This document shows, piece after piece, positions 2-64,000 of a stretch of DNA of 64,000 nt. The notes beneath the pieces are model-generated. The model ran no database searches. It was not told the DNA's origin and saw only the letters and a list, made by a program, of their open reading frames with translations. Each line of letters begins with the position of its first letter. The stretch's first letter is position 1. The stretch covers positions 1-64,000 of the IMG/VR virus record IMGVR_UViG_3300038361_000164; one strand, written 5' to 3'. The translations under genes were made by a program, and so were the position numbers.

Positions 2-1192
2 GGTTCATCTGGTAATTCGGGTACATCTGGATCATCGGGATCATCAGGTACATCAGGAGCTGCAGGAGCTAACGGCACATCAGGCTCGTCAGGATCATCA
101 GGTACATCCGGATCATCTGGTAAATCTGGAACATCAGGTTCATCAGGATCATCTGGAACTTCAGGAGCTGCGGGAACTTCAGGAACTTCAGGAGCTGCGG
201 GAACTTCAGGAACTTCAGGAGCTGCGGGAACTTCTGGGTCATCGGGATCATCCGGTACATCTGGATATTGAACAGAAGTTGCTGGTGAAATTTATTATAC
301 CGGTAATGTAGCAATTGGTGGTACCAATCCGGCAAAACGTTTCCATATAACCGGCTCAGGCACAGGAGCTTTAGCTCCAGCATTTAGATTAGAAAATACA
401 GATGCGTCTGTGGCTGATTGACAAATGGTGGCCCACAGTAGTGATTATTTCTCTTTTAATGAAGTCGGTATAACTGGAAGATTTTTCATAGCAGCAGGCG
501 GTAACGTTGGAATAAAAGCTAATGCTACTTCATATCTGTTTGAAGTTGATGGTGGTACTACTGGTGGAGATATTCTTTGCTACGACATATTTACACATGA
601 CGGAAATGTGGAAACTTCTGATGAAAGATTAAAAGAAGATATTGTAACTTCAGCATTAGGGCTTGATTTTGTTAATGCACTAAACCCTGTTAGTTATAAA
701 TGAAAAACAGTTCCAGAAAAACAACAAATGGAATCTGGCAACGATGTAGCCCTGACAACTATAAATAAAGAGGTAACTACAGAAGAAATAGTATTTGAAA
801 ATGACAAGTATGTGAAAAAAGTTATAACAGCATTCCAAGATGTAGAAGTGCCAGTAATAGATGTACATGACTTATATAATGAAGCTGGGGAAATTATAGG
901 CCAACACGAAATACCTCGAATGGAGCCTTATGAAAGAGTTCATAGAACATTTCCAGAGGAAACCCATAGTCGAACTCATTATGGAATGGTATCACAAGAA
1001 GTGGAACAAGTGCTTCTCAATGCTGGGCTAACCACCAAAGATTTTGCAGGATTTATTCGTGAAAGCAAAAGAGATAGATATGGGCTTAGATATACAGAAT
1101 TTATAGCTCCAATGATAAAAGCTATTCAAGAACTGTCAGCCAAAGTAACACAGTTAGAAGCTGATTCACATACTCATGTCAATATTAAATAA
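2..1192 (+). CDS. Tail fibre/spike C-terminal part with G-S-S/G-T-S repeats and peptidase S74 intramolecular chaperone domain (5' truncated; TGA=Trp)
   Basis: Frame is open from base 2 to TAA 1192 if 3 TGA (269, 418, 701) are Trp. Contains TSDERLKEDI, LNPVSYK(W)K, HYGMVSQEVE and YGLRYTEFIAPMIKAIQEL, all S74 motifs. Confidence 0.9.
155..235 (+). repeat. 27-nt tandem repeat x3 (GTSGAAGTS) inside a Gly-X-X low-complexity tract spanning 2-267
   Basis: ggaacttcaggagctgcgggaacttca twice, then a third copy ending in tct. Confidence 0.9.
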
Positions 1193-1195
1193 AAC

Positions 1196-1225
1196 TTGAC
1201 TAGTTTTAGCACTATGATTTATATT
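1196..1225 (+). promoter_or_regulatory. Putative sigma70-type promoter, possibly giving a leaderless mRNA
   Basis: TTGACT-N18-TATATT, then 6 nt, then ATG 1232. Confidence 0.45.
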
Positions 1226-1231
1226 TAAGTA

Positions 1232-1414
1232 ATGAAATTGCAACCGAAAACTAATATAGCAGACGAACTAACTTTGGCACAAAGATTAGAACAAGCTGCT
1301 AAAGAAATAGTAGAAAACCAAGCAGCTAGCGAAGGTGTACATGTAGAAATAACTCCAAAAGTAATAGACGAGATAGAAGAGTATGGCGACAGATTATACG
1401 ACTGGGAATCTTAG
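1232..1414 (+). CDS. Small acidic hypothetical protein (60 aa)
   Basis: ORF follows a promoter-like sequence and overlaps the next gene by 32 nt. Confidence 0.5.
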   Translation: MKLQPKTNIADELTLAQRLEQAAKEIVENQAASEGVHVEITPKVIDEIEEYGDRLYDWES

Positions 1415-2324
1415 TCTAGATATAAAATATCCTTTTGTTAGTTTTGCGCAGAATTATTTTGCACAACATGGCACCTATACCTGAACGTCCGATCCTCGTA
1501 CTACTGGGATTATTATAGCTGATAAGTATGCGATTAATATAGGTGTAGCCTTTCAACGTCCCACTATCATAGTATCAAGAGGGCCTATTGCTTGAAGCGA
1601 TGTAATACGTAATACAACAATACCAGGAACGGGCGTACAATATACTTTAGAACAGGAACGATTACAGGGAAACATAGGTACACACGACACACGGCAGAAT
1701 GCTACAATTACTAATTTAATAAACGGCTCTATACGTTATAGTGTGTTATTTAAAGAAGGGTTACCAGCAGAATCTGCGGCGAGTGATTTATTTTTTGCCT
1801 TAGCAGCGTATCAAGAAGATTTTAAGGTAAAAAAAATACATAGCATTAAGAATTTACGATTAGGAGAAGAAAGATTAGTTAAAACTAAATCTGATAAAAT
1901 TCTTACACAAGTAGATATCGATCTTCAATTCGAATCTCAAAAAACATTACGACGTGGAGAAAAACAAAGTTACTGTGTTGTATTTATTGATGCTGTCGAA
2001 GTTTTCGAAGGTATTAATTATACTGTTAAAACTAACGGAACACAGATTGCCTTTAACACAGCACCAGCTTTGGCAGAGGCGTTAACAATAACTTATACAG
2101 ACGCCACTACTTTACTAACTGTTACATTAGCAGCTTTAGGTACAGGAGATGGCACTACAACTGTATTTACTATTCCAGATTCGGGAGCAGTATATGGATA
2201 CTTTACTTGGTTATCTGAATTCATTGTAACTGGCCCAGGAATTACTTCACTTACTTTAACAAATAACTATCCAGATGGCGGCGAAGAAACAATAAGCGGC
2301 ACCTGGTTTCAAGCAGATGGGTAA
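1383..2324 (+). CDS. Probable tail completion/terminator-type virion protein, 313 aa (2 TGA=Trp)
   Basis: ATG 1383 is in frame with ORF 1743..2324 through 2 TGA (YT-W-TSDPRT; RPTIIVSRGPIA-W). Lies upstream of the sheath gene; function inferred from position. Confidence 0.65.
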
Positions 2325-2339
2325 TAAACAGTAAATAAT

Positions 2340-3221
2340 ATGGGTTTAACACAAGAACAACAGATGGAACATTTCATGATAGGCTTTCAAGATCAACTTG
2401 AAAAGACTGCATTTATTCCACAAATGACTGCTAAGATTTTACCACATCTTCTTAAATGAAAGAAGTTACTTACAACACCGTCTAAAACTAATATTGGAAA
2501 ATTTGTCATAGGCATAAAAAACGCTAAAGGCAAAAGATTAGAATACTTATCTAAAATGTCTGATCCACTAGAAAGAGCGATGAGAAATACAAAAGGCAAA
2601 GGATTTAAAATGCCTAAAATAGATCCACTACAACAAGTTGGCGGCGCTGGAGGCACCCTTTCTAGGGGAATTAGAACTTCTATAGGTAACACTGCTCTTA
2701 ATTTACAGACACTTTCTAAAGGACTTAAAGGACAGGGATTTGTAAAAGGAACGGGTCAATTTGTTAAAAACTTAGGAACTATGTCAAAAAATCAGATACG
2801 TGGATCAAGATTAAAAGAAATTGACTTGACTAATAAGCATTTATATTACGATATTAAAAGCAAGAATACGTTCTTAAGGGGATCAGGTCCCTTGGGACGT
2901 TTCAAAATTTTTGACAGAAAAGTAGTAGGTACTATTAACAAGGGCGGTCGTAACACTGTAATAGTGAAAAAACGACCTCTTGCCCACGCAGCTAGCGCGA
3001 CTTTAACTGCGCCAGGAATACTTGCTACAGCTCCGTTACTCAATTTGGGAGATAAGACGGACAAAAAAGGTAAGAAAATACCTTTTGCGAAAAGATATTT
3101 AAAGGCTGTACCGAAAGCACTGCCAGAAGTTGCTACCTGAGGAGTCGCAAGACCTCTTGGTTATGGGATAGAAGGAGTACGAGGTATAAAAGGTATACAT
3201 AGCCTTCTTAACACAACTTAG
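2340..3221 (+). CDS. Basic Lys/Gly-rich hypothetical virion protein, 293 aa (2 TGA=Trp)
   Basis: ATG 2340 is in frame with ORF 2556..3140 and extends to TAG 3221 through 2 TGA. Confidence 0.7.
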
Positions 3222-3244: not shown

Positions 3245-4873
3245 ATGGCTTACACTAAACCAGGTGTAGAAATCACTCAAGTGCAGACAACTGCACAACC
3301 TATCTTAACTGCTCCAGATATGATTGGTTGCATAATTGGAGAGGGTTTTTGGTGGCAGGATCCATCATGGGATGACTCGACAGATACAGTACGATATTCT
3401 GTATTTGCAACACAATATGAAAACAACTATTTGTTCGTTCCTTATTCAGGAATTAACTCTACGTACAATACAAATGTATTAGAAGGATCGGTTATTGTAG
3501 ATCTTTTACCTACACAAGGTGATGGAGCAGGAATACTTGTAAATGTATTAACATCTCAATTTACAACTACGGCTTCAGGAATTTACATTGATGCAAGTTT
3601 AATATCTTCCGGCGCTAAAGCTGACATTCACGTAGGGTTCTTAGCTAAGAATCCAGATAATGTGGAACAGTTTGGTACCTTATCTAGTCTTTCTGATATC
3701 AGAGATGCTATTGGAGAGCCAGTTAGTTGGAATCCTTTGGCATACGGTATATATACTGCTATGGTAAATGCTGGCACAGAAATTAGTTACATAGGCGTAT
3801 CTGGATTTACAGCCGATAACTTTGGAGAAGCTCTAGATAATTTAGCTTCTGAAGAAGTGTATGCTATCGCCCCAATGAGTCAATTGGCGGTTACAGCTAC
3901 CTATAAAACTCACGTAGAAGCACAATCAGCAGCAGCTGGTAAAAAGGAGAGAATTGCATTTTTAAATAGCATTACTCCATGGACCGGCACACCACATGCT
4001 GAAAGTACTTCAGATAAAACTACAACAGCGGAATCGTTAAGAGATACTAATTCAGCTGTTAGATCAAAACGTATTTTTGCGACATTCCCAGATATTGCAT
4101 ATATCCAAGAACGTCGTCATATTTCATCAGTTCATCCAGCATGGTTAGATGCGGTATATACAAGGTATACTCCAGCTGGTATTAGTTTTGCTGATTCGAA
4201 TACTTATAATGTTTACGCACTATTAGCATCTGATTTAAAACTAAGTGGAACACTTTACAAGAAAGGTACTAAAATTACAGCAGCCAACTGGACTACTTTA
4301 AAAGCAGCAGGTTGGGCAGATGGTGGAATGGTGACAGTATTAGCACCAGTTCCTGGCTATTACTACGCAGCTGAATTGTTAGGACTACGTATCGGAAACT
4401 CACCATCACAGTCATTGACTAACATCGCCTTAGGACTTGCTAAACGTACTTATGGTTCTCAAGATTATTTCTCTGAGACCCAATTAAATACTATGGCAGA
4501 AGGTGGAACGTTTATAATGACACAGGCGAATAGTAACTCACCTGTAGTGAGTAGACATCAGTTAAGTACCGACGTAACTTCTATCGCAAAAAGAGAGCTT
4601 AGTATAACCTCTGCGATTGACTTTGCAGCTAAGTTTGTAAGACAAAGTATCAATCCATATATCGGAAATACAAATATAACAACAAACTTTATCACTTTAA
4701 TTAATACAATTTTAGTTGGTATTGGTTTGTACTTGGTTAGACAAGAAATTGTTGCAGACTTTAGTATTGTTTCTGTTACTCAAGATAGTATCAGTCCAGA
4801 TGTACTAAATGTTGATATAGAAGTATTGCCTCTATACCCAAGTAACTACATCAGAATTAAAATGATATTCTAA
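3245..4873 (+). CDS. Contractile tail sheath protein
   Basis: N-terminus MAYTKPGVEIT and C-terminal sheath domain (RELSITSAIDF...DVLNVDIEVLPLYPSNYIRI). Directly precedes the tube gene. Confidence 0.88.
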   Translation: MAYTKPGVEITQVQTTAQPILTAPDMIGCIIGEGFWWQDPSWDDSTDTVRYSVFATQYENNYLFVPYSGINSTYNTNVLEGSVIVDLLPTQGDGAGILVNVLTSQFTTTASGIYIDASLISSGAKADIHVGFLAKNPDNVEQFGTLSSLSDIRDAIGEPVSWNPLAYGIYTAMVNAGTEISYIGVSGFTADNFGEALDNLASEEVYAIAPMSQLAVTATYKTHVEAQSAAAGKKERIAFLNSITPWTGTPHAESTSDKTTTAESLRDTNSAVRSKRIFATFPDIAYIQERRHISSVHPAWLDAVYTRYTPAGISFADSNTYNVYALLASDLKLSGTLYKKGTKITAANWTTLKAAGWADGGMVTVLAPVPGYYYAAELLGLRIGNSPSQSLTNIALGLAKRTYGSQDYFSETQLNTMAEGGTFIMTQANSNSPVVSRHQLSTDVTSIAKRELSITSAIDFAAKFVRQSINPYIGNTNITTNFITLINTILVGIGLYLVRQEIVADFSIVSVTQDSISPDVLNVDIEVLPLYPSNYIRIKMIF

Positions 4874-4885
4874 GGAGAATAAAAA

Positions 4886-5557
4886 ATGGCACCACTTAAT
4901 ACCTTACAAACTTGGGGTGAATCCCAATTTAATAATAACGTACAGACGATAGATAATTTATCTAATTTTCTATCCGCGGAATCTATGGTGGTATGTACAG
5001 GGCCTCCAGAGTACAATCCAGCAGATGACTTTGCAAATTTGATTCCAGTTGGACTGGTTCAAAATGTCCAGGTATCACAGAATAAACAAATCAGTCAAGT
5101 ATTTGAAATAGGATCTAGAAAACCTATTTTTATTCCAGGACGTACGATTGTAAATTGTGGAATATCAAAAATACTATTTGATAGTCACTCATTGATGAAG
5201 GCTTTGTATTTACAAACTCACAGCGATGTAATTGGACTAGGAGTAGAGGATGTAGATGGAGTTGATGTTCCAATTACACTAAGTACAGGTGAGGATGCAC
5301 CTGGATTAGTTACAGATGGTACTACTCCAGATTTCTTTATTAACTTAGCTTCTAAGTTCTTTAATAGACCTTTGGGATTAGGATTTTTCTTGAGAGATAT
5401 GGAAGGTGATCAATATGGCGGATTTTATTTAAATAACTGTTATATTCAACACCACACATTTAATATTGCTAGTCAGCAAACTATTTTAGTTGAAAATGTA
5501 TCTATAAGATGCTCTCGATTAGAACCAGTTGCTTATGGCGCAGGCTCGACAATTTAA
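4886..5557 (+). CDS. Tail tube protein
   Basis: Follows the sheath. Contains PVGLVQNVQVSQNKQISQVFEIGS, typical of tube proteins. SD AGGAG upstream. Confidence 0.8.
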   Translation: MAPLNTLQTWGESQFNNNVQTIDNLSNFLSAESMVVCTGPPEYNPADDFANLIPVGLVQNVQVSQNKQISQVFEIGSRKPIFIPGRTIVNCGISKILFDSHSLMKALYLQTHSDVIGLGVEDVDGVDVPITLSTGEDAPGLVTDGTTPDFFINLASKFFNRPLGLGFFLRDMEGDQYGGFYLNNCYIQHHTFNIASQQTILVENVSIRCSRLEPVAYGAGSTI

Positions 5558-5613: not shown

Positions 5614-6192
5614 TTAAGTTCTTTTAAACTGCTCTATTAATGTATTTGCGGCATTAAACTGCTCGTCCAAAGTCATGTCTTGATTATAAATTTCATAAGT
5701 AAAAGGATAATCATCTAAAGAAGTTTCCGAAGCGTGATTACTGAATTCATCTTTTATTACATCTCTATATAACCTAATAACGATCCCTCCTGCCGCTTCT
5801 ATTGCCTTTACTTCGTTGGGAAACCTAACGTCAGTTGCTACAACCTTCAGTAATGGAGTTTGTCTAGAAGCATAATCTTCGATATCCTTAATCGTTTTAT
5901 TAGCCCAAACATCTGGATACATTTTACGAAAGATATCTGTTCCAACATACTGTAATACTTCACGATATGTAGGATGTCTACCTTTTAAGGTAAGATGTTC
6001 TTGAGCTTTTGCTTTATCAGCTTCAAGTTGTCCATAATTCACTACTCCAAGATAATCTTGACATAATTGTTTTAAAGGACCTGCAAAAGAAAATTTTACG
6101 TATTCATCTGATTTTATAAGTCTTTTACCTATACTATCTTTGCCAGCACTTCTTTTTCCAGAAAGCCCAACAATAAAATAATTTTTATCCAT
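5614..6192 (-). CDS. Deoxynucleoside monophosphate kinase (phage type)
   Basis: P-loop GLSGKRSAGKD, FSFAGPLK, REVLQYVGTDIFR, VATDVRFPNE, HASE. Confidence 0.92.
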   Translation of the reverse strand: MDKNYFIVGLSGKRSAGKDSIGKRLIKSDEYVKFSFAGPLKQLCQDYLGVVNYGQLEADKAKAQEHLTLKGRHPTYREVLQYVGTDIFRKMYPDVWANKTIKDIEDYASRQTPLLKVVATDVRFPNEVKAIEAAGGIVIRLYRDVIKDEFSNHASETSLDDYPFTYEIYNQDMTLDEQFNAANTLIEQFKRT

Positions 6193-6204
6193 TTTTTATA
6201 TTGA

Positions 6205-9200
6205 TTAATGTACCCAATGATCGCTAATAACTGCATCTACTTTCATAGGAACAGAGTCTGCATAATGATTAAAAGCTTCAATCATTTTTAACTCCATCAT
6301 CTTAGCGACAGCTTTTGCATCGTCTTCATGTACTTCTACTAGAATTTCCATTTGTGTTGCGAACTAACCGATTCCGTTAGCTCTCTTTAGGTTTCCCCAA
6401 AGATCGGACTATATCATAGGCCCTTCGGCCTTCAAGATCTTTCGGCATATCTTTATACCTACTCGCAATTTTTACGATAGTCTCTGAAGGTGGAATTTTA
6501 TAAATATAATCATGATCATCATATTTTTTTAAAATTTTTGCAATCATAGGAGTATCATGCACTTTAAATTGTATAAAGTATCCTCGACATCCAATTGTTT
6601 TATGACGTGTACCGTGTAACTCAAATTTTTTATTAATAAAAGATACAAAGTTGTCTGCAAATTTTAAACTATATACTTGGCCAATGCTAAGACTATAATA
6701 TTTAAGTTGTCGATGAAAAGTTCCATCGTCAAACATAAGTAAAGCAAATCCCAACTCTGTTAATCCTCCTAATGTTTTTTCTACTTTCCAGAAGTCAGCT
6801 TCCTTTAAAGCATTTAGGATTTCATTTTTACCAACTGTAAATTCGTATAAAATACTCTTTTTATTTACAGAACCCCACAATTTTGAATGTTGTAAAGTTG
6901 TAATTAATGATTGTTTATATTCTAAATAATTTTTTACATATCCTCCGAACTTTATTCTTAAAGTTCGTTTTTGACGCATCCAATATGCATCTCCTAAATA
7001 TGAACTAATTATTACTTGTTGTTCTTGTTTTGTCATTTTATTCCCTCCCTGCTGATTACCCAATCCAAAAGATTTTAGCACTAAGGCACTTTTGGCTCTA
7101 AGGGTTTTCCAGCAAATTATCTTGATTTACCCACGACGCTATTCCGTATCGTGCACAACATTAACAATTCTGGCATCCCATTTGTGAATTTTAATATTGT
7201 TACTTATTTTAACTAGCGCTAACTTAGTAGTACTAGCACCACAGCCTTGAAATGGCATGTTCTTAGCTTCATTAATAGCATGTGACACTTCTCCCTTATT
7301 ATCCCAGTCTATGTGACTTACGTCCATTCTGCGATGATCTAAAGGTGAATAGGTATATCTGTTATGTTCAACTGCCTCAGACAAGTCATCCATTAAGTTT
7401 TTAATATACGGAAATGTTATAAAATATTTCTTCATCAGTTTACGTGCTTCATACAAATTAATACTTAATGTAGCCGCAAGTTTACTAACTCCCATTCCAT
7501 AAAGAATGCCGAAGCTTATTGATTTTGCTGGGTTTCTATATTTTGTTTTCATTTCGTCTATTAACTTACCGTTTTTATCGAAGAACTTTTCATAGTCAAT
7601 TCCAAAAATAAGACTTGCTGAGTAGCAATGTAAGTCCATGTCGTTTTTCAGAGCGTAAATAAATTTAGGCTCTTTGCTCAAATGAGCTAATAATCGCAGT
7701 TCTTGCAGTAATTCCCTAGCTTTCGCTAAGGCCCGGACTCTCTCTTCACCCCAAAGGGTGCGCCGTATATAGTCTCTACACTTGCCCGGAAAGATATATC
7801 TTTCCTGCTAGCTCGGGATTGCCATCAGCATTATCTGTTAAGGTTTCCCCGAATTAGCGGCGTTTTCATCTATAAATTTCTTTATAGCGGAGCCTTGCAA
7901 AAATTTTTCATGTTTTCTCTCTAAATACAAATTACTATCAGCATACAATAAGTCATAAAATTTAACAATTTCTGACTGTGTACACACCCTTACTAAGCCT
8001 AAACCATTTGAAAAGGTTCCAGTAACTTTTAAAAATTGTTTTAAATATGTTTTTAATTGATTAAAAAACAGTTCAGAACCAGTAGCGATTTCAACAGATA
8101 CTCTTTTATCTCCAACACATTTCACACAACCATCACCATCTAAAACTCCTCGCACAATGTGAGATGTTAGTGGTATGTTTAAATGCAAAGTTTTGCTTTT
8201 ATTTGGAGTTATTCCAATTTTATTTAAAAATTGATGTATTTCTTTATTACCAAAGCGTACGCTACACATATATGATCCATATTTTTTATTCTTATAGGAT
8301 TTTGGCTGCACATCATACCCTATAAATTTACTATATTTACATAAATGTTGTACATCTTTTTCATCTGCAGAAACATCTATTGTATATTTGCTATAAGTAG
8401 GAGTGGAAATATTACCATCAGCCGAAATAAATCCTATCCAATATTGAACTTCTTTGTTTGAAAGATCTTTAAAAGGATTGGTTTTCACGACACGTTGGGT
8501 TTCAGAAGGCCCTTTTAAAACATAATTATTTCGCAGCAATATGCGTCTAATTGTAGTGTTATATGTTTTTAAGATTTTCCCTATTTCTGTAGGGTTTTTA
8601 CCTTCATCGTAAAGAGTACATATTTGTAATTCTTGAGAGGGAGTATATTTATTATGTATTGTCATACCTCAATATACTCGTATTTTAAGCAGAAAACAAG
8701 TAAAATATTTCGTTATCTTGACCCGAAAAGTCTGCTGCGATTATTCTATAATCAGGATACTGAGCTGTAAATGCTGCCCTGTATTCCTTTTCTTTTGGTA
8801 TATTCATTAGGTTAGGTGTTCGTCCTGCGAATCTACCTGTGCCTGCACCTAATTGTGCAAAACGAGCATGTATTCGTAGATCAGATGGATGAATATGTTT
8901 TTCTAGAAAAGCTTCTCCATAAGTACTTACTTTTTTTGTAGCTTCTCTATATTTCAATAGTGCATCTGTGGCAGGGCTTCTTAAACTTTTTAAGATTGCA
9001 GCTCCTGTACCAGCGATTTCTTTTCCTAATATCTTTTCTAAAGCAGGTCTTACCTGCAAAGGAGATCCATAATTAATTACCGGGTCTCCAAATAAATCTG
9101 TTTCACATACTTTTTTGAAATATGCATTTAAATCTTTAAAGGCGCTATCAGCTCTTACTAAAGCTTCTTTCTGCAAAAATAACCACTTATCTTTGTTTAT

Positions 9201-12010: not shown

Positions 12011-12012
12011 AT

Positions 12013-12810: not shown

Positions 12811-12836
12811 GTTTTCTATTTGATTATGTTTTCATA

Positions 12837-12854
12837 TAGCAAAAAGTTTTGCTA
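12837..12854. promoter_or_regulatory. 18-bp palindrome (operator-like) in the intergenic gap after the Ubl gene
   Basis: TAGCAAAA-AG-TTTTGCTA, perfect 8-bp arms. Confidence 0.5.
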
Positions 12855-12855
12855 C

Positions 12856-15304: not shown

Positions 15305-15307
15305 AAT

Positions 15308-51686: not shown

Positions 51687-51694
51687 GAGTATTT

Positions 51695-54600: not shown

Positions 54601-54802
54601 CGACAAGTCGGATTTGATAAGTTACCTGTATGATAATGGAGCTACCTATGTAAATGTAGACATGGACATTAATGCTATTGAGTATGATCCGGTGTTTGTA
54701 AAAACAACTGTAAGAGTTGCCTCTACTTATACAATTCCTATTGCGAATGTGAGCAGATTTTATACACATGTAAACTATTTAACAGGTATCTCTAAAGTAT
54801 AA
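51695..54802 (+). CDS. Baseplate J-like wedge protein, 1035 aa (7 TGA=Trp)
   Basis: LDAVAANFMVYRTAGTKSYG, FIGGSLREDNETFFNRI, IDVEVVGAG. Four ORFs join in frame and end in TAATG. Confidence 0.85.
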
Positions 54803-56487
54803 TGAGTTTTAACCCACAACCAGTTATAAGTACAGATCGAATACTAGATAGTCTCGGTTCTTTTTATAATAACTTAGACGAAGCTACTAAAACTACACTG
54901 AAAGAATATTGATCAGCAGTATACACAGGTGTTGAGGGGTTGTTGTTTGAACTTTTTCAAGCAGATTTAACTACGTATTTGCAACATACTACTGGGTATT
55001 TAGAACATGCTTATCAGTCATATAATATTGTTTTCACAGGAAATAATATAAATATTGATACAACATTTTTAGATATCCCAACTACTCTTTCTGGGTCACC
55101 TTCAGCTACAGTACTTAATGGGGAGTCTTATGCTTATAAAATAAGTGCCATAACAGATTTTGGAGAAACACCTGTTTCAAACTCAATTGTAGTAATTAGT
55201 GGAGGAACGGATCTTAGTGCTAATAATATAAATTTAGGATGGGGCGCTGTTACAGGAGCCTCTCACTATAATGTATATGGACGTACAGTTGGAGGCACTT
55301 TAGCTTTATTGGATTCAGTAGAAACAAATTCTTACACTGATGTGGGAATTACAGCACTAACTAGAACATTGCCAGCAACCAATACAGCTGTAAAGACTTT
55401 TAGATATCAACTTGGCGATGAAAGAGCTTATGTGTCTATTCCCACTCTAAGTGGTTACACAACTTCTCAAGTATTAACAGAGCAGACTCACTATGAAGTA
55501 GAAGATTTACATAAAATAAAGTTTTTACAAAACCTACATAAAGTCAAGTTCGACGTAACACAAGAAGTTAGTGGCGATAGTTTTATAATTAATAATGTTA
55601 AAGGACGATCTATAACCCTTAAACGAGGTGTTAGGTATGTATTTGTATTAACTACAATAGATAATTTTGCTCTTACAAGTGTTGGAAGTAATTTAACAAC
55701 GCCCGGCACTTCGACTACTGTTGATTATACTCCAACAGCCTTAACTCCAGATACTATTTATTATAACAACCCCTCTGGTTCTTTAGCAATTAGTGTGGTA
55801 GATGATATTTCTAATGTTATTTTTTATAGAGCAGAGCAAGAACCATTACAGGCTGGAGAAAAGTTTTTAGCCTTATCTGGATATAGTTTATTGCCATCCT
55901 TATTTAGTATATACTTTCCAGGGTTTGGTGCGGATACTCCAGAAGATGTTGTTTTAAATAATCACTATCAACCATACGCCAGTGGTTATGCTACAGGTGC
56001 GTTAACTTATACTCAAAAACGCTTAGCATATGCAACTCATTTAAAGAACTGGTCATATGCCTATTCCTCTAAGTTAAGGTCTTCACCTACAGTTTCAAAT
56101 TTGGAAGCTGCGTACTCCTTAGTAAAAGGACTTCCTTTTGTATATGAATCGGGAGTAATATCTTCTATTACAAATATAAGTAATTATAATTATGTTGATG
56201 TTTTGTTATCTGATAATACAACACAAACTTATGAAATTACAGATAGTTTACTTTTAAACATAGTAGATGGTCAGTCGGTATCTAAATTTGATGTTATCTG
56301 TTCTGGAATCAGTTTAGTAGATTATTTGATAGACGAATATACTGTTTCTGGTTATATGACAAAAACAGGAAGTGTATTAGAATTCGATGTAGGTATAGAT
56401 CATATAAATGAATTAGGAGTAACTCCTAAATTTATTGAGAAACTAGATTTAACTGTGCGCTCTAAAAATCTTGATGGGGAGTTTTAA
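54802..56487 (+). CDS. Baseplate wedge/fibre-attachment-type protein with an FN3-like domain, 561 aa (1 TGA=Trp)
   Basis: ATG 54802 is in frame with ORF 54940..56487. Contains INLGWGAVTGASHYNVYGR. Confidence 0.7.
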
Positions 56488-56488
56488 A

Positions 56489-57373
56489 ATGTTGACTTTA
56501 GTTCGTAACATCAGTTACACCTTTAATTATCATAACAAAGACCATAATTTTGCTTTAAGCACACACACTTTAGGTGGCACTGTTTCTGGTGTGTTGACAG
56601 ATAGTAGCGCTGTAGTGCGCACTTGAAAGTTTTTAGATGGCACTACGTGAGAAGGCGCGGTACTGTACAATGAATTAGAACCATATGCGGGCACTACTTA
56701 TGCAGAAGATACATCTGAAAGAATTTATTTAGACAAGTTGGTATTTACTCCAAATTCAACCCATGCAGACACTGTGTATATGCAGTGCACTCAACATGAA
56801 AATGAAGGAGCGGAAATCACTATTAGTGATACTGAAGGCTCTATTGTAAATAATATTGAGCTTTATCATTTATTATGTGCTCATCATTCCAATCGTGTTG
56901 AGTATGCTAATACCCCAAACTCAGATTTAATAGAATACTTTTTAACTAATTTTATACCAGCGGGAAGCAAACCTAAAATAATTAATGCAGCACCAAGTGG
57001 AACAATTACTGGTGATGTAACAAGTTGATACGATCCAGCTGGTGCAGATATTTCTCTTTCTGGGTTGCTTTCGGACTTGGAAAATGATATATTAATAAAG
57101 ACATGAGAACAGACAGCTCCAACTATTGCATTGCTAACTAGTTCGAGCTTATTGAGTCCTATATCAAGCTCAACAACTTTAGGGATGAGCGCGGATCTAA
57201 CAGATCCTCCGGTTGATACTATTTATGATTTTCGACTAAGTATTGATGATACATATAATACAACAAGAGTTATAGCAGAAATTAAAGTATCAGGAGTTAC
57301 TGCTTTTGACACTTGAGATCACGACGATTTTGCTATAGGAGATTGTCGTTTACCTTTTACACTATTACCATAA
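56489..57373 (+). CDS. Hypothetical virion protein, 294 aa (5 TGA=Trp)
   Basis: One frame from ATG 56489 to TAA 57373. Confidence 0.72.
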
Positions 57374-57384
57374 TGGAGAAATAA

Positions 57385-59085
57385 ATGGACGCATTAACAG
57401 CCTTAGTAAATACACAGACTCCAAATATCGCGTTGAGCGGAATTCAAAGTAATTTCGAAATCATAGAAGCTGCTATTGAGGTTAATGAGGGAGTTATCAC
57501 AGGAGCGGAAGGAGTGCTTGTAGGCACTACTGCTTCACAAACCTTAACAAATAAAACCATGGTTTCTGCTGGACGTGGCGGTACTAACTTATTAGATATC
57601 GGTAGAAAGGATTTGGGAGATGATTCACTATTTAATGTTTTAACATATCGTAATGGATTGGGTAATAATAGCATAACTAACATAAAAGTAGATGATGATA
57701 CTATTTATAACTTGACTATTAGTGGTGGAAACGGAGTTAAGGCTTCTGCTACTAACAATTGATTACATTTAGATTTAGAAACAGATGCTGTTTTATCAAG
57801 TGCATCTCAAACATGAGTTCAAGGTGCTTCAGCCATTACAACAGGATTCGCAACAGATTTCGCAGGAAACGTTCGAGCTAGAACTAAACTTGCTTTGGGC
57901 TATCACACAGTGGCTCCTACTTCAGATTTCCATTTTAAACCACAGTCGATGTTAAATGACTTTTCAGGAATATATGAAGTAGCTTCTGGACAAAATATTA
58001 GTGAGCAGTATACTGTAAATACAAACACACTTCAAACAGTGTGGGACGGGACTACCTGGCTTCAAAGCTTGAATGGCTCTGTTATGCAAACATTAGTCGC
58101 TGCTGGATTAACAATTAGTGGAACGCTAGATGTGAGCGGAGATATTAATGCGACAGGTGCCGGAACTTATAAAGGTACTATTGACGCAACTGCAACTTTA
58201 GGTGCAGACTTAGTAGGCACCTCACAAATTAAAGATGACGCCGTAACAAATGCTAAAATGGCAAATCTTGCGATAGATACTGCAGAGTTAGCTGCAACTT
58301 CAGTTACTACAGCTAAAATTGGTAATTTAGCAGTTACCACAGGTAAACTAGCAAGCGCTTCTGTTACGGAAGCAAAAATAGGAACAGGTGCGGTGGTGGA
58401 AGCTAAACTAGCGACAGACGCCGTTACCACTGATAAGGTGGCATCCTCGGTATTTGGAAATAGTATGCAACTGGCTGGAGGAAATTGAGATGTCAAGCCA
58501 GGAAACGCAACTATATCTGTTAACGCTTCCGGAGTGCAGCTGGGTGATGTAACTATCACAAATTTAAGTACAAATATCATTGATGATACAATCTCTGGTG
58601 TAAATAATATATGGACAGCATCTAAAACTGGGGCTGTTATAGAAGAAAGTGCAGGATACTTCGGAGATAAAACACGTATTAAATTATCTACTATAGCATT
58701 TGAAAAGGGATATTCACATACAGATACAGGTGTGCGCGGATCTCCATATGATTATTATAGGCTCGAAACTCTTGGATACACTTATGCATATATACCACTT
58801 CCAATTGGATTTAAAACAACAGGAGCCTGTCTTTGGGCATCAAATACCTTAGTTAAATGAAAAGTTCACGAATGTAGTGTAAAGAATGAGGATCGCACCA
58901 GTCTTTCGTCGACCTGAACAGACTCCGTCTCAGCGGATTCTAGTGAATCAATAACACCATATAATATAAGTGATTCTACTGTAATGGTTGCTGGTGGTTT
59001 TAAGTATGTTATATTCGAAGTTTATAATACCGGACCTACCGTGCATAACTTCTACGGTGCCACAATTGAAATTGAAAAAGCTTAA
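57385..59085 (+). CDS. Tail fibre-like protein with 10-aa repeats, 566 aa (5 TGA=Trp)
   Basis: SD GGAG upstream. Three ORFs join in frame. Contains AVTxAKxA-type repeats. Confidence 0.78.
58237..58446 (+). repeat. Seven 10-aa degenerate repeats (xAVTxAKLxx)
   Basis: DAVTNAKMAN/LAIDTAELAA/TSVTTAKIGN/LAVTTGKLAS/ASVTEAKIGT/GAVVEAKLAT/DAVTTDKVAS. Confidence 0.8.
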
Positions 59086-59094
59086 GGAATAATT

Positions 59095-62000
59095 ATGAAT
59101 AAAATAAAAATACCAGCAGGTACTAAACAAAATTTTGAGACTGTATTTGAAGATCTTCAAACTAAAATACAGGCTAATATAAACAATAGACTGAGTCTTT
59201 TATTAGGAACCTCTAATGGATTACCTATACTAAAAAATAATGGAGCTTTAGTAACTGGGGAAAATGATTTTAAAATCAGTTTATATACTCAAGATGGTTT
59301 AGAAACTCGTATACAAGTACAAGGTGGTACTGTCTTTTTTGGTAACGGTGAGTTTTACACATTACCTTCTACACAGGAAACCTCTTTAACAAGTCCAGCT
59401 GCTTCGACAGTATACTTAGTTAAATTACGATATGCGGAATTGGGCGGAAGCCCTGTTGCTGCACAAAATAGTTTTTTGTTCGACACTGTTAGTGATAATC
59501 CTTATTCTCAAAAGAACACAAGATTTAGTGATTCTTATACTATTATTTGGGTAGCTTTAGCTAGTGGAACGGATATTACTTACGGCTCTAATGAAATCCC
59601 ATTAGCCCTGGTAAAGACAGGAACAGTAGGGGCTAGTTATTTATTTCAATCTTCTGCTTGAACATATTTAGATTCTTCTTCAACACACACTGCAGTAGCT
59701 GGTGTGGTCGATTTAAGAGCTTCTTACGATCTTAAAGTACGTACAGAAGTATTAGATGACTCTTTACTAGTTTTTAAGGATCGAGACAGTACAGGTACAA
59801 ACAAATTAGCCGCAGATTTAGAAGTAAATAATTTTACCACTTCAGGCCTAACTGCTGTAACTGGGGCCTTTTCAGGCGCTGTCGTCGGGGAAAGTACGGG
59901 TCAGTTTCAAACTGCTTTAAATGTTGTTGGTTTAACAAATACTGGATATTTAAATTTTTTAAATTCTTCTGGCTTATATTCTGGAAGATTAGTCTTCGAT
60001 GCATCAGATCAAAAATTAGGATTTACTGACTCTATTGGAATTTTCGGAAGTCATATGCATTGAAATAATTCTGGATACTTTGGATGAACTAATTATGTAT
60101 CCTTTGATCCCTTAAAACATTTTCACTTGCACCAACGAGGTTCGCAAGTAACAACAACTCTCAGATTAGATGCGGATTCTACTTCTACAGACTCAGATAC
60201 TGACACAGTGTTTGATATTTCTGTGTTAGCTAATGATAACGGCAGTAATCTTGGAAAACTTACAGTTCAACCTGTAACTAACAACAGATCAGTCTTTTTT
60301 AAAGATGTGGCTGGTAATGATCTATTAGCAATTAATCCTGGTAACCGTTCAATAGCAGTTGGAGATTACACAGCAACTAATGGACTTATTTTAAACACTA
60401 CAAGTTTATTTAAACAAACATCACAATTTGACGCAGCTGTTTCTATGGATACATTAACAGCCTCCGGAATTGCTGCTGTAAATACACTTACATTAAATGG
60501 TAGTTCTGTAAAAGTTGAGGAATCTACCCCAGATCCTGTTCTTAATTTTAGAATCTATGATGTATTTCCTACTGAAGATATTACAGAAAAAAAAGCATAT
60601 CTTCATTTAAAATGGGGATATGATAATCTAGTTGCCATTGATGTAGACTATACTGCGGGAACAGTCACTTTGCCTCTCACAAATGAAGTAGGTGAAACAA
60701 ATACTTTTAACACACAAGTTGCTAGAAGCATTTTTAAATTTAGCTCTGTCGGTGAGCCGGAATTTGACATTTTAAGTTCTACTATTTCCGGATCTTACCG
60801 AGTACTTACTCTTGATACTTCGTCTCAATCTTTAGTGGCCGGCACACATATATCTTCGGCCGAATATCCATCAAAAATATTAGATGATACTAAAACTAAA
60901 GGATATACTGTTAGCCTCAGTGAATTCGATGCTACCAACGCTAATCGTGCGCATTATAAAACAACACATACTTTAGGAGCAGTTCATAGAACATCACCAG
61001 AATTAATAGTTAAACTTGAATTAGGAAAATGATGGTTTGTAAAAATTAATGGATTTAATTCAGATAAAGAAGGTTTGGTAAGCTCTTTACCGTTTGGAAG
61101 TTATGATCCAGATCATGCAGCAGGAGGACAAGCATCTGTTACATATCAAAGTCCTTATCAACATAAATTACCATTTTTAGATAACACAGGTTCAATATCT
61201 TTAACATCTACTAATTATGGATTTAATATAGATATTACGGGATGAGAAGATACTACAGATTCTGAGCAAACAGCTCATGAGTTTGAAATAATTTACTCTA
61301 CTGTAGCGGAAAATGGTTTTGAAAATTATACTAATACCACACATCTTATTACAAAAAATAGATTTGTTCCAATTAGTTCTAACCAACCAAATACTTGGTA
61401 CGTTTCAGTAAGACCCTTACAAAATAAACAAGTTGTAGGCACAGCCGTGGCTTCAAATATTGTTGCTGGTGGCGGTGGAGTGGCTCCGTCAGATGAAGCC
61501 TGGCATTTAGCTGGTTTTAATGTGGAAACGGTTTCCGGAACAATTGCCAATATAGGTGACATGGCTAATTCTAATGTTAATGTTACTATGAGTGATTTAG
61601 CTATGTACGGAAGTAATCAACTTAACGGAGAATGAATGTCTGTGGCGTATTCTGGCGGCGGTGGAGGTACTCACGAAGCTAGAATGTTGGATAATTTAAC
61701 TACTATTAGTGGATCTCTTATGACGCAACGCTTTAAGATTGAAAGTTTAACAGATGTTTCTGGTTTAATAGTTGTGGGAGATCCGTGGACTATTGGAGTA
61801 GATAAAGCATCTCGTTTGGTACATGAATTTAAAGACTTGCCAGTTGATTATACAATTACAAATATAGCTGTAAACGTAACTTCGGTAGATGGTGTTTCTT
61901 CATCTTCACCGGCTGTAATGAGATTTTATCAATATCCAGAAGAAGCGAGTGCTAGTCTTTTAGAAATTGCGGGAGTCGGTACTTATTCAGAAACTCTTAA

Positions 62001-62172
62001 TTTCGATATAACACAATCTGTTTATAGTCCTAGAAAATTAGTAATTGATTTATGAGATCCGTCGGATTCTCCCAACAATACTTGTAGTGTGCGTGGCGGA
62101 GTTATTGTGTGAGTTAAACCTAAAATAAATATATTAGGTGGAACAACTCAAGATTCTGGTAGTACTTCTTAA
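59095..62172 (+). CDS. Large beta-rich virion/fibre protein, 1025 aa (8 TGA=Trp)
   Basis: Five track ORFs join in one frame to TAA 62172. Confidence 0.78.
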
Positions 62173-62193
62173 AAATAATTAACCAATTATATA

Positions 62194-63018
62194 ATGTCAA
62201 AAACTTATACAGAAGTTTTAAAAGATTCTAACGGAAACCTTATTCAAGGTGCATTGGTTAGCTTGTATCTCGATGGAGTACGCATAGATGTGGATAGCAC
62301 TTCGAAAGATGGCCGCTTTACATTTACTGGACTTACTACAAATTATTATGAACTTAGATTTAAAGGTCGTGGATTTACTAGTGATGATACTCGGTATATA
62401 AGTATTGTTGATGATATAGATACCGACAGTTTAAAACCAGAAATACGATTAGAAAGATTATTAGCACAATTTAATGCAATAACTTGGGCTTCCAGAGCTA
62501 TTTTAATTGCAGCTGTAGATGACGATCTTGTTTCTAGTTCTAATACTATGGTTGCTAGAGATTTTTTAATTCGTCCTCCCGCTGTTACGGAATCAAATAC
62601 TGCTTATATTTTTGAAACATCATCAGTAGATGTAAATGTTTCTGGAATTACAAAAGCTGTTGTAACTGCCGATTTCAATCTTACAGGAGATGCAAAGTTT
62701 AAATTAGAAACAGACTTTACCGGGGCCGGTAATTGATTTACTTGGTTAGACACTGCAGATACCACTGTCATAGGTAATGGAAATTTATTTCCTAATGGAT
62801 ATAGAGATTTAAGAGACATAGAAGTAACAACTTCTGGGGTTATCGCAGAATATACAGTTTCTGGTGTCTCATACATAGCTGGATTTACAGGATTTGTAGA
62901 AGGAGAAACTCCAGTTATTAAAGCAACACTCACGACAGATATATTAAACCAAGGAGGTTACTTAACTAGCTTGGCTGTTTTTACCAACCCAAATTTAGTA
63001 GACCCACAAACCACTTAA
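62194..63018 (+). CDS. Virion protein with N-terminal prealbumin/CarboxypepD_reg-like domain, 274 aa (1 TGA=Trp)
   Basis: DSNGNLIQGALVSLY...STSKDGRFTFTGL...YELR. Confidence 0.7.
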
Positions 63019-63024
63019 TTATAT

Positions 63025-64000
63025 ATGCGATTTCATATACTTGGATTGCCACATACAAAAATAAGAAAAGATCTTCCTTGAGCCTTTTGTGCTTATACAC
63101 AAAAAATTCATAACATGTGTAAAATGTTATATGATAATAATCATGAAGTTTTTTTATATGCACATACAGGAAGTACAGCTCCTTGTACGAAGTTAATAGA
63201 TTTTTATCCTAATAACATGTTTGACGAATGTTTTGGAAAAATCACTTCTGACACCCGAACAGCTTTTAATACAGAAGTACCGACAAACATTTGAGCGCGA
63301 GATAACTTCGCCAAAGAAGTAAATAAACGTTTAATAAAAGATGACATAATTTTAGCACCTTTTGGGGATATGTATGAAGGAAGTACTTTCAAAAACTGCA
63401 AAGCACCTGTAATAGAAATGGCAATCGGATATCCCAATTGTCATTTTGCATATTATAAAGTGTGGGAAAGTTATTATATTAAAAATCACATAGATGGTCG
63501 CAATCATAATGAAAAACCCAACTGATCTGAAACTGTAATACATGGTTATATTGATCCAGAGGAATATATTTATAATCCAAACCCAAGAGATTATTTTCTA
63601 TACATGGCAAGAGTGGAGGACGATTATGCACATTCAAAAGGACTGCATTTAGCATTAGAATTACAAGCTAAGTTAGGCTTTAAACTAATTATAGCTGGAC
63701 CAGGTCCTGGGGAAAAATATGTTAGAAATAATGTGACTTACATAGGCCCAGTTTCAGAAACCGAGAAAGCGTTATTATTATCAAATGCTAAAGGATTATT
63801 TTCTTTAAGCCTGTACCCAGAACCTTTTGGATATATAGTAATTGAAAGTTTAATATCTGGCACTCCTGTAATTACTACAGATCATGGAGCTTTTCCAGAA
63901 ACAGTAATAGAAGGTAAAACAGGTTTTAGAGCAATTTGTTGAGATGATCTAGTCAACGCAGTGGAAAATATCAATAATATATCTAGATACGAATGTAGAG
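63025..64000 (+). CDS. GT4 family glycosyltransferase (3' truncated; 4 TGA=Trp)
   Basis: MRFHILGLPHT, LIIAGPG, YPEPFGYIVIESLISGTPVITTDHGAFPETV. Confidence 0.9.

What the first reader, a model, noticed from the sequence alone, without database searches (positions are those of the whole stretch)
2..64000. TGA reassigned to Trp, but only in virion genes and some glycan genes: a two-code genome
Seen: reading TGA as sense fuses the fragmented ORFs into 21 continuous genes with no frameshifts, ending in TAA/TAG that often overlap the next ATG (23876, 26166, 51240, 54802). The TGA codons fall where Trp is expected (S74 YK-W-K at 701, DegT K-W-FGID at 25522-25524, sulfotransferase C-terminus). Hand counts give about 50 TGA vs 31 TGG in the recoded + strand genes, against 0 TGA in about 120 Trp codons across 5.6-19.65 kb and 26.7-41.2 kb. 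Established: stop-codon-recoded phages with recoded late genes have been reported. Inference: the host uses the standard code, early genes stay compatible with it, and a later switch (suppressor tRNA or RF2 inhibition) licenses virion synthesis.
Basis: partly seen in the sequence, partly recalled or inferred. Interest (0 to 1): 0.85.

Follow-up and report, generated by a model that had tools for sequence, protein, structure and literature searches.

The report
Phage that reads TGA as tryptophan
This is the first 64 kb of a 210-kb marine jumbo phage that uses TGA as tryptophan in its tail, lysis and some sugar-pathway genes but as a stop in its early genes, a pattern already described in gut phages, here paired with an oddly shaped candidate tRNA for reading TGA.

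Summary
Reading TGA as sense turns the fragments into exactly 21 uninterrupted genes in the window. TGA aligns with Trp in homologues that use the standard code: 12 of 22 sites in tail and baseplate genes, 4 of 5 sites in DegT (Trp or aromatic), and the S74 site.

The split by module is real. Recoded genes have 81 TGA against 62 TGG; the two minus-strand early blocks have 1 against 106 (Fisher p = 1e-24). That single early TGA is a stop in an ATGA overlap. Further along the contig, nine more early genes end in TGA, mostly in ATGA or TGATG overlaps. The host therefore very probably terminates at TGA.

I walked the contig to 190 of 210 kb. It carries 26 ordinary tRNAs, none with a UCA anticodon. 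A conserved 98-nt tRNA with a UCA anticodon, G73, CCA end and a long extra arm lies just upstream of the lysis amidase. It occurs only in the relatives closest to this phage; two are clearly recoded.

The phenomenon is already published for gut phages. This is a new marine member. Refinements: sheath and tube genes are TGA-free, while a DNA ligase, PhoH and the amidase outside the window are recoded. The timing role remains inferred.

The parts
2..1192 (+). 3' part of a tail-fibre gene with a C-terminal S74 chaperone domain. It has 3 in-frame TGA (269-271, 419-421, 701-703) and 0 TGG.
   Evidence: PHROG tail-fibre hits. Weak Pfam S74 hit. TGA 701-703 aligns to W of a relative's S74 domain.
1383..3221 (+). 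Two recoded genes of unknown function (1383-2324 and 2340-3221), with 2 TGA each.
   Evidence: No family hit.
3245..5557 (+). Tail sheath (3245-4873) and the following gene (4886-5557, probable tube). These are virion genes WITHOUT TGA (9 TGG, 0 TGA).
   Evidence: phrog_2839 tail sheath, E = 1.5e-11. Codon counts.
5614..19651 (-). TGA-free block of about 18 genes. It includes DNA polymerase pieces (7838-10609) and a class II ribonucleotide reductase (15820-17802). It has 52 TGG and no internal TGA.
11498..11500 (-). TGA used as a stop codon. It ends gene 11501-12010 inside an ATGA overlap with the start of gene 10908-11501. If read through, it adds 6 codons.
19663..20436 (-). Recoded gene of unknown function, with 5 TGA and 2 TGG.
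20426..22146 (-). Two TGA-free genes inside the recoded island: an MptE-like gene (20426-21115) and a 343-aa gene (21115-22146). Together they have 13 TGG and 0 TGA.
22149..26744 (-). Five recoded sugar-pathway genes with 26 TGA in total. They include a DegT-type aminotransferase (25030-26166, 5 TGA) and a methyltransferase-like gene (26166-26744).
   Evidence: The DegT pieces hit PF01041 in the expected order. Full-length homologues span all 5 TGA sites, with W or an aromatic residue at 4 of them.
26744..41176 (-). TGA-free block with 54 TGG and 0 TGA among genes of 80 aa or more. It holds glycosyltransferases, GDP-mannose 4,6-dehydratase (28842-29813), an AAA_24 ATPase, an AEP primase-polymerase (34328-37084), a CCA-adding enzyme with HD domain (37093-38580) and a helicase (39794-41176).
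42101..63999 (+). Tail and baseplate module of 13 genes. Twelve carry TGA (43 in total). The module includes a tape-measure-like gene (49168-51240), a baseplate wedge / Baseplate_J-like gene (51695-54802, 7 TGA) and tail fibres (57385-62172). Gene 48446-49168 (sigma-like) has neither TGA nor TGG.
   Evidence: PHROG hits. The module is syntenic with a standard-code relative, L016, whose W residues align with 12 of the 22 TGAs covered.

Best explanation
The window is the first 64 kb of a 210-kb jumbo phage genome from aquatic or marine metagenomes. The genome is written in two dialects.

The first dialect covers genes for replication, nucleotide metabolism, transcription and tRNA supply. These genes are standard-code compatible. 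They have no internal TGA, and about ten of them use TGA as a stop.

The second dialect covers most tail, baseplate and fibre genes, the lysis amidase, a 7-kb sugar-modification island, and a few others outside the window (PhoH, a DNA ligase). In these genes TGA stands for tryptophan at roughly half to 60% of Trp positions.

The host most probably terminates at TGA. In that case the recoded genes give only truncated products until a TGA decoder is present.

The likeliest decoder is a phage-encoded, unusually shaped tRNA with anticodon UCA. It has G73, A1-U72, an encoded CCA end and a long extra arm. It sits at contig position 76160-76258, just upstream of the amidase gene. It would presumably be charged with Trp by the host TrpRS.

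Shown: the TGA = Trp assignment, the split by module, TGA used as a stop in early genes, and the existence, conservation and phylogenetic co-occurrence of the tRNA(UCA).

Inferred: that this tRNA is the decoder and carries Trp, that the host uses the standard code, and that recoding times or licenses late protein synthesis.
For: - Coding continuity: ORF coverage rises from 88% to 99% when TGA is read as sense. This yields 21 uninterrupted genes.
- TGA = Trp, tail and baseplate: relative L016 has intact table-11 genes in the same order. Its residues opposite 22 window TGAs are W 12, Y 2, F 1, L 1, M 1, T 1, A 1 and gap 3.
- TGA = Trp, DegT: W in 7 of 8 homologues at 25281, W in 7 of 11 at 25524, W or F at 25866, aromatic at 25638.
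- TGA = Trp, S74: FEWK in the relative against YK*K here.
- Comparison with recoded relative L121: 10 TGA/TGA, 3 TGA/TGG and 14 TGG/TGG pairs.
- Trp content: TGA plus TGG gives about 1.1% Trp in late genes, similar to 1.2-1.5% in early genes.
- Split by module: 81 TGA to 62 TGG in recoded genes, against 1 to 106 in the window's early blocks, p = 1.4e-24.
- Beyond the window: minus-strand genes at 83-159 kb have 224 TGG, and their in-frame TGAs lie only at gene ends or upstream of the likely true start.
- TGA as a stop: 10 early genes end in TGA, 8 of them in ATGA or TGATG overlaps with the next start, some preceded by a Shine-Dalgarno sequence. Sense TGAs in late genes are spread evenly, with a mean relative position of 0.55.
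- The decoder itself: the Rfam tRNA model matches locally at 30.5 bits, with loop CUUCAAA. The five-helix fold has -36.9 kcal/mol and z = -2.46. The sequence is identical in an assembly from a second sample.
- The decoder in relatives: syntenic homologues in L121, L122 and L123 (and part of one in L124) are called tRNA(tca) by ARAGORN. Compensatory changes occur in the acceptor, anticodon and T stems.
- Co-occurrence: the tRNA is present in recoded relatives and absent from the same site in the non-recoded relatives L125, L127, L129 and L130.
- Literature: the same architecture is published, including a code-change module upstream of the lysis genes (10.1101/2021.08.26.457843). Phage tRNA(UCA) inserting Trp has been shown experimentally (10.1101/2025.10.30.685624).
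Against: - No expression or proteomic data exist, so timing is inferred.
- The host is unknown. The closest GDP-mannose dehydratase relatives are spread over many phyla.
- This phage's own copy of the tRNA(UCA) lacks the D-loop GG and the T-loop UUC consensus that its relatives keep. ARAGORN misses it at default settings. It could be impaired.
- A long extra arm with G73 is the shape that SerRS recognises, not TrpRS. This rests on my general knowledge.
- No RF1, TrpRS or RF2 antagonist was seen in 190 of 210 kb. The last 20 kb was not read.
- The recoded sugar island lies on the 'early' strand, directly joined to TGA-free genes. Strand or operon alone therefore does not define the recoded set.
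- Sheath, tube and holin genes are TGA-free, so the rule is not simply 'late genes are recoded'.
Confidence: 0.8

Rival explanations
1. The host itself uses code 4 (TGA = Trp, no RF2). The whole phage is then simply a code-4 phage, and the TGA-free genes reflect history or codon bias rather than a switch.
For: No gene in the window needs TGA as a stop, and TAA dominates the stops. TGA stops are rare across the whole genome. Phages of code-4 hosts are known (from my own knowledge).
Against: About 330 Trp codons in early genes include no internal TGA. Yet 10 early genes carry a TGA exactly at their end, 8 of them overlapping the next start as ATGA or TGATG. That positional pattern is what a stop codon gives, not a Trp codon. 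Standard-code relatives of the same clade (L016, L125-L130) also use almost only TAA, so rare TGA stops are a clade habit. The phage carries its own tRNA(UCA), which a code-4 host would make unnecessary.
Confidence: 0.07
2. The recoding is real, but the decoder is not the odd tRNA(UCA). Candidates are: the phage tRNA-Trp(CCA), read by near-cognate pairing in the manner of a Hirsh-type suppressor; a canonical suppressor in the unread last 20 kb; or a host factor.
For: The phage tRNA-Trp(CCA) has C at position 9 and an A31-C39 mismatch. From memory, A9C in E. coli tRNA-Trp allows UGA reading. This phage's tRNA(UCA) copy has lost the D-loop and T-loop consensus. Contig positions 190-210 kb were not scanned. 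Borges et al. found suppressor tRNAs in only 35% of TGA-recoded genomes.
Against: The tRNA(UCA) is conserved at the same site in four other contigs with compensatory stem changes. It is absent from the syntenic site in the non-recoded relatives. Its sequence is identical in two independent assemblies. About 180 sense TGAs are a heavy load for near-cognate reading.
Confidence: 0.2
3. TGA use has no timing role. Once a suppressor exists, TGG drifts to TGA under A+T pressure in genes where slow or leaky decoding is tolerated. Highly expressed or early-needed genes stay TGA-free by purifying selection.
For: The genome is 35% G+C. Abundant virion proteins (sheath, probable tube) are TGA-free. Recoded and TGA-free genes are interleaved at 20426-22146 within the island, and at 180-190 kb, where a helicase is TGA-free and a ligase is recoded. 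TGA and TGG interchange between relatives.
Against: The contrast is extreme: 0 internal TGA in about 330 early Trp codons against roughly half to 60% TGA in late genes. Drift alone does not predict this unless early genes truly cannot be read with TGA, which is itself the two-phase model. Ten of 14 comparable TGA sites are shared with a relative at 59% identity, so the TGAs are old and maintained.
Confidence: 0.25
4. TGA encodes Gly (code 25) or selenocysteine, or the interruptions are pseudogenes, frameshifts or assembly errors.
For: ARAGORN labels the relatives' tRNA as tRNA-SeC. Code-25 bacteria exist in aquatic samples, and Patescibacteria appear among the GDP-mannose dehydratase hits.
Against: No TGA column is Gly, Cys or Ser. 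W dominates. The tRNA has a 7/5 rather than an 8/5 or 9/4 acceptor/T geometry. No SelA or SelB was seen in the Pfam lists of the called genes. The same sequence appears in several independent assemblies. The reading frame is kept across all 81 TGAs.
Confidence: 0.01

Closest known systems
TGA-recoded (code 4) gut phages of the Jade, Sapphire and Agate clades (Borges et al., 10.1101/2021.08.26.457843)
   Same: Genomes are large, about 150-210 kb. TGA = Trp is confined to structural and lysis genes, arranged in several modules spread across the genome. Replication genes are largely free of it. Close relatives use the standard code. The suppressor tRNA sits upstream of the lysis genes.
   Different: This phage comes from aquatic or marine metagenomes, not gut. 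No TrpRS or RF1 'code-change operon' was found in 190 of 210 kb. The tRNA(UCA) has a long extra arm. A sugar-modification island is recoded.
TAG-recoded crAss-like and Lak phages (code 15), validated by metaproteomics (PMC9523058)
   Same: They follow the same logic: a stop codon is reassigned only in late genes, a phage suppressor tRNA is present, and the host uses the standard code.
   Different: The codon (TAG) and amino acid (Gln) differ. This phage does carry a tRNA(CUA), but it shows no TAG recoding.
Phage TrpRS:tRNA-Trp(UCA) pairs AP1 and HF2, shown to insert Trp at UGA (10.1101/2025.10.30.685624)
   Same: A phage tRNA with anticodon UCA and, in AP1, discriminator G73, decoding UGA as Trp.
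   Different: Those tRNAs come with their own TrpRS, and no long variable arm is mentioned in that paper. Here no phage TrpRS was found, and the tRNA has five helices.
tRNA-Sec (selC) and allo-tRNAs
   Same: UCA anticodon, long extra arm, G73. This phage's copy also has a 6-bp D stem with a 4-nt loop. ARAGORN labels the relatives' copies tRNA-SeC.
   Different: The acceptor/T geometry is 7/5. No selenocysteine machinery was seen. The codon columns are Trp. The comparison with allo-tRNAs rests on memory only.
Code-4 bacteria (Mollicutes, some insect endosymbionts) and their phages
   Same: TGA = Trp.
   Different: In those organisms the whole genome uses TGA as sense and none of it as a stop. 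Here TGA is a stop in one set of genes and a sense codon in another.

Membership tests
Stop-codon-recoded phage with a mixed-code genome (TGA to Trp) | In-frame TGA inside otherwise continuous, homologous genes | tested here: met
   There are 21 such genes. Coverage rises from 88% to 99%. Homologues align straight across the TGAs.
Stop-codon-recoded phage with a mixed-code genome (TGA to Trp) | TGA columns are Trp in standard-code homologues | tested here: met
   W at 12 of 22 tail and baseplate sites. W or aromatic at 4 of 5 DegT sites. W at the S74 site.
Stop-codon-recoded phage with a mixed-code genome (TGA to Trp) | Recoded codons confined to some modules (structural, lysis) while others stay standard-code compatible | tested here: met
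   81 TGA to 62 TGG in recoded genes against 1 to 106 in early blocks, p = 1.4e-24. The pattern extends to 190 kb.
Stop-codon-recoded phage with a mixed-code genome (TGA to Trp) | Phage-encoded suppressor tRNA for the reassigned codon | tested here: inconclusive
   A conserved tRNA(UCA) lies upstream of the amidase and is found only in the closest relatives, two of them clearly recoded. Its shape is non-canonical and its function is untested.
Stop-codon-recoded phage with a mixed-code genome (TGA to Trp) | Host uses the standard code | tested here: inconclusive
   The host is unknown. Indirect support comes from 10 early genes that end in TGA, 8 of them in ATGA or TGATG overlaps.
Jade-type 'code-change operon' (suppressor tRNA + TrpRS + RF1 upstream of lysis genes) | TrpRS and RF1 genes next to the suppressor tRNA | tested here: not met
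   The genes around 74.9-79.7 kb have no such Pfam hits, and none appears in the lists for 59-161 kb. Positions 190-210 kb were not read.
Code 25 (TGA = Gly) phage of Gracilibacteria or Absconditabacteria | TGA columns are Gly | tested here: not met
   No Gly at any of the TGA columns examined.
tRNA-Sec (selC) | 13-bp acceptor/T helix (8/5 or 9/4) and selenocysteine machinery (SelA, SelB, SECIS) | tested here: not met
   All four copies have 7-bp acceptor and 5-bp T stems. No SelA or SelB appears in the Pfam lists. The codon columns are Trp.

The most novel reading that the evidence does not exclude
The TGA decoder of this marine phage lineage is a new kind of tRNA-Trp. It is a five-helix tRNA(UCA) with Trp-type acceptor features (A1-U72 or G1-U72, and G73). 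Its long extra arm has a stem that changes freely between lineages, but its loop always shows UCCAA, the core of a tRNA-Trp anticodon loop. That loop might be what lets the host TrpRS, rather than SerRS, charge a tRNA of this shape. In the phage studied here, the D-loop and T-loop elbow contacts have also been lost together.
Probability: 0.2. Interest if true: 0.75.

Novelty: new member of a known kind. Interest (0 to 1): 0.5.

Why it matters
Stage-specific stop-codon recoding has so far been documented mainly in gut phages. This case shows the same design in an aquatic jumbo-phage lineage that also has standard-code relatives at 40-67% protein identity. That gives a natural before-and-after series for studying how a code change starts.

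Two points are useful beyond annotation:
- The early genes show direct sequence evidence that TGA is still a stop, through ATGA overlaps. This is a simple, general test for 'two-code' genomes.
- The candidate decoder is a tRNA that standard finders miss or mislabel as tRNA-Sec. This may explain why many TGA-recoded phages appear to lack a suppressor.

Practically, this contig and its relatives are badly fragmented by table-11 gene calling in public databases.

Tried and rejected
- Megablast and tblastn against cultured phages found nothing.
- A run of apparently circularly permuted tRNA genes at 110-111.75 kb first looked like split suppressor tRNAs. They match the Y RNA-like family YrlA and are not decoders.
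- Single-protein locus searches with the baseplate neighbour and the amidase returned only the same phage.
- A degenerate DNA pattern for the tRNA(UCA) found only this phage and a near-identical strain.
- Host inference from GDP-mannose dehydratase failed. The best hits, about 60% identical, are scattered over many phyla.
- Global alignment of the tRNA(UCA) core against the 26 phage tRNAs gave no clear parent.
- The base after sense TGA shows no context that would favour read-through. C is in fact depleted.
- G+C and GC3 of the recoded sugar island do not differ from its neighbours, so there is no sign of recent import.
- The 'sulfotransferase' label could not be confirmed from pieces.
- One contig look-up was lost because the gene starts with TTG.


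Full report
**What the window is.** An exact 42-mer from the window's end occurs in one IMG/VR contig, IMGVR_UViG_3300038361_000164, which is 210,263 bp long. The same record in JGI is Ga0427900_000012. Coordinates show that the window is bases 1-64,000 of that contig. The window is 35% G+C. It has no nucleotide or tblastn match among cultured phages.

Gene content marks it as a contractile-tailed jumbo phage:
- tail sheath, baseplate wedge, tape-measure-like protein and tail fibres with an S74 chaperone domain;
- an AEP primase-polymerase, helicases, DNA polymerase and a class II ribonucleotide reductase;
- further along the contig, a multisubunit RNA polymerase, holin and amidase, ClpP, ThyA, an RNA ligase 1 plus PNKP pair, 26 tRNAs and a tmRNA.

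Relatives found through a conserved actin-like protein come from aquatic, largely marine, metagenome records.

**Check of the observation.** With TAA and TAG as the only stops, ORFs of 100 aa or more cover 99% of the window, against 88% under table 11. Freeing TAG instead gives only 90%. The resulting genes form a tidy chain: + strand 2-5557, - strand 5614-41266, + strand 42101-64000. Every gene ends in TAA or TAG.

Fifteen are on the + strand and six on the - strand between 19663 and 26744. The one-base stop/start overlaps at 23876, 26166, 51240 and 54802 are present.

| Gene set | TGA | TGG |
|---|---|---|
| Plus-strand recoded genes | 50 | about 32 |
| Minus-strand sugar island | 31 | 30 |
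| Two minus-strand early blocks | 1 | 106 |

Fisher's exact test gives p = 1.4e-24. If TGA counts as Trp, late genes have 1.1% Trp, similar to the 1.2-1.5% of early genes. Without TGA they would have 0.44%.

**Which amino acid.** A protein search with one baseplate-neighbour piece found a 42%-identical homologue on a 54-kb contig. That contig, L016, carries the same tail and baseplate gene order. Its genes are intact under table 11.

Aligning its proteins to the window across the stops covered 22 TGAs. Opposite them L016 has W 12 times, Y 2, F 1, L 1, M 1, T 1, A 1 and a gap 3 times. Of 40 aligned W residues in L016, 12 face TGA and 9 face TGG.

For the DegT aminotransferase, a search with one 75-aa piece returned full-length homologues 38-46% identical. 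They align across all five TGAs:

| TGA position | Residues in homologues |
|---|---|
| 25281 | W in 7 of 8 |
| 25866 | W or F |
| 25638 | aromatic |
| 26028 | variable |

The S74 site at 701-703 aligns to W. Against a recoded relative 59% identical (L121), Trp positions pair as 10 TGA/TGA, 3 TGA/TGG and 14 TGG/TGG. No TGA column is Gly, Ser or Cys. TGA is therefore Trp, not Gly and not noise.

I walked the contig to position 190,366.

In the large minus-strand region at 83-159 kb there are 224 TGG. In-frame TGAs there lie only at the very ends of genes or upstream of the likely true start. Ten early genes end in TGA. In eight of them the TGA is part of an ATGA or TGATG overlap with the next gene's start codon, several preceded by AGGAG-like sequences. 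One such case is in the window, at 11498-11500.

In late genes, by contrast, sense TGAs are spread evenly, with a mean relative position of 0.55. A Trp codon would not sit only on gene boundaries, so in these genes TGA acts as a stop. The host therefore very probably has RF2 and the standard code. I could not identify the host directly.

**Which genes are recoded.**
- The tail sheath (3245-4873) and the next gene are TGA-free despite 9 TGG.
- Two genes inside the sugar island (20426-22146; 13 TGG) are TGA-free.
- The sugar genes at 27.8-31.4 kb (GDP-mannose dehydratase and glycosyltransferases) are TGA-free.
- Outside the window, the amidase, PhoH and a DNA ligase are recoded. The holin, a helicase and the RNA polymerase are not.

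The recoded sugar island lies on the 'early' strand and overlaps its TGA-free upstream neighbour by one base. Its composition is ordinary. Any control at the island therefore acts at translation, not through a separate transcription unit.

**The decoder.** ARAGORN finds 26 tRNAs and a tmRNA between 104.5 and 131.1 kb. They include tRNA-Trp(CCA) and, oddly, a tRNA(CUA). None has anticodon UCA.

The Rfam tRNA model gave one extra local hit, at contig position 76169-76225. It lies in the gap between a 115-aa gene and the amidase start. The 54-aa ORF called there overlaps the amidase start and is probably spurious.

The 98-nt element at 76160-76258 folds into five helices:
- a 7-bp acceptor stem with A1-U72, followed by G73 and CCA;
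- a 6-bp D stem with a 4-nt loop;
- an anticodon arm with loop CUUCAAA;
- a 7-bp extra arm with loop UUCCAAC;
- a last arm, GAGGG/CCUUC.

The fold has -36.9 kcal/mol and z = -2.46. The sequence is identical in an assembly from another sample.

In the closest relatives from the metagenome scan, ARAGORN finds a 96-97-nt 'tRNA-SeC(tca)' at the same place, about 2 kb upstream of the actin-like gene. Those copies have normal D and T loops. The acceptor, anticodon and T stems show compensatory changes. A covariance model built from the four sequences finds only these elements and a truncated fifth.

The tRNA is found only in the closest relatives, most of which are recoded:
- L121 and L122 are recoded and have it.
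- L123 has it but shows only one TGA in its short locus.
- L125, L127, L129 and L130, at 63-67% identity, are not recoded and lack it at that site.
- L016, the standard-code relative, also lacks it in the stretch I hold, which comes from its tail module.

This placement matches the published position of the suppressor tRNA directly upstream of the lysis genes in Jade phages. However, I found no TrpRS or RF1 here.

**Open points about the tRNA.** The extra-arm stems differ completely between lineages, but the loop always contains UCCAA, the core of a tRNA-Trp anticodon loop. This could be an identity signal, or it could be chance among three lineages.

A long extra arm with G73 is the shape recognised by SerRS. 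That statement rests on my own knowledge. The codon columns nevertheless demand Trp.

In this particular phage, the D-loop GG and the T-loop UUC are both gone. Either the elbow contact has been given up, or this copy works poorly. In the second case, the phage tRNA-Trp(CCA), which has C9 and an A31-C39 mismatch, or something in the unread 20 kb, may carry the load. I put the odds that this tRNA is the main decoder at about 60%.

**Comparison with what is known.** Borges et al. describe exactly this design: TGA = Trp in structural and lysis genes of roughly 150-210-kb phages, replication genes largely spared, standard-code close relatives, and a proposed role in timing lysis. Phage tRNA(UCA) has since been shown to insert Trp. 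A 2026 survey lists recoded jumbo phages. The finding is therefore a new member of a known kind.

What is new here:
- the aquatic lineage, with a graded series of standard-code and recoded relatives;
- the clear evidence for TGA stops in early genes;
- the recoded sugar island;
- the TGA-free sheath and tube genes;
- the unusual tRNA.

**Verdict.** The regulatory 'licensing' step remains an inference. Interest is moderate, 0.5. It would rise if the five-helix tRNA(UCA) proves to be a Trp-accepting tRNA of a new shape.

Noticed in passing
Contig 110,000-111,750 (minus strand), outside the window; L010:2700-4440, L019:12100-13850: An array of 7-8 small RNA units that look like circularly permuted tRNAs: T arm, then an acceptor stem closed by a TTCG loop, then a D arm. 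They match the Y RNA-like family YrlA (RF02553) at E about 1e-7, below its gathering score. Each unit is preceded by TTGGCTAT-N7-9-CTTCCTTC and followed by GATTTCCAAACA. That motif occurs nowhere else in 161 kb. No Ro/Rsr gene was seen.
   Followed up: partly
Contig 115,365-115,439 (minus strand); L021:17962-18036: A well-formed tRNA with anticodon CUA (an amber suppressor; ARAGORN calls it 'Pyl'). It is present although TAG is not recoded: TAG ends about one gene in six, and freeing TAG barely raises ORF coverage.
   Followed up: partly
Contig 109,296-109,371 (minus strand); L010:5083-5158: The phage tRNA-Trp(CCA) has C at position 9 and an A31-C39 mismatch at the top of the anticodon stem. 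From memory, A9C in E. coli tRNA-Trp permits UGA reading, so this tRNA might also contribute to TGA decoding.
   Followed up: no
Contig 92,296-99,360 (+); TGA at 94,675-94,677: The 793-aa beta-like RNA polymerase gene ends in TGA. It lies in the same frame as the next gene, 1553 aa (beta/beta'-like), only 21 nt further on with no TAA or TAG between them. Read-through after the code switch would fuse the two subunits.
   Followed up: no
Window-wide and beyond, e.g. upstream of window 18989-19651, 39794-41176, 62194 and 63025: The motif AACCA lies 13-16 nt upstream of about 16% of start codons, nine times the background rate. It occurs alongside ordinary Shine-Dalgarno sites (38% of genes) and equally in recoded and TGA-free genes.
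   Followed up: partly
Contig 104,475-104,855 (minus strand): A phage-encoded tmRNA (Rfam 88.8 bits) with tag peptide GKTQFALAA, next to the tRNA region.
   Followed up: no
Window 37093-38580 (-) and contig about 145,250-147,150: The phage encodes a CCA-adding enzyme with an HD domain (in the window) and a T4-type RNA ligase 1 plus PNKP pair (outside it). Together with 26 tRNAs, this amounts to a full tRNA supply and repair kit.
   Followed up: no
Contig 87,741-88,661 (minus strand): A reverse transcriptase gene (RVT_1, 306 aa) lies next to MoxR-like AAA and VWA genes. I did not examine whether it belongs to a diversity-generating retroelement.
   Followed up: no
Window 22149-22997 (-): This gene ends with TGA immediately followed by TAA. 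It has 9 TGA against 2 TGG, the highest TGA share in the window.
   Followed up: no
Window 7838-10609 (-): DNA polymerase similarity (phrog_17) covers only the middle gene of three adjacent genes. This suggests the polymerase may be split into separate ORFs.
   Followed up: no
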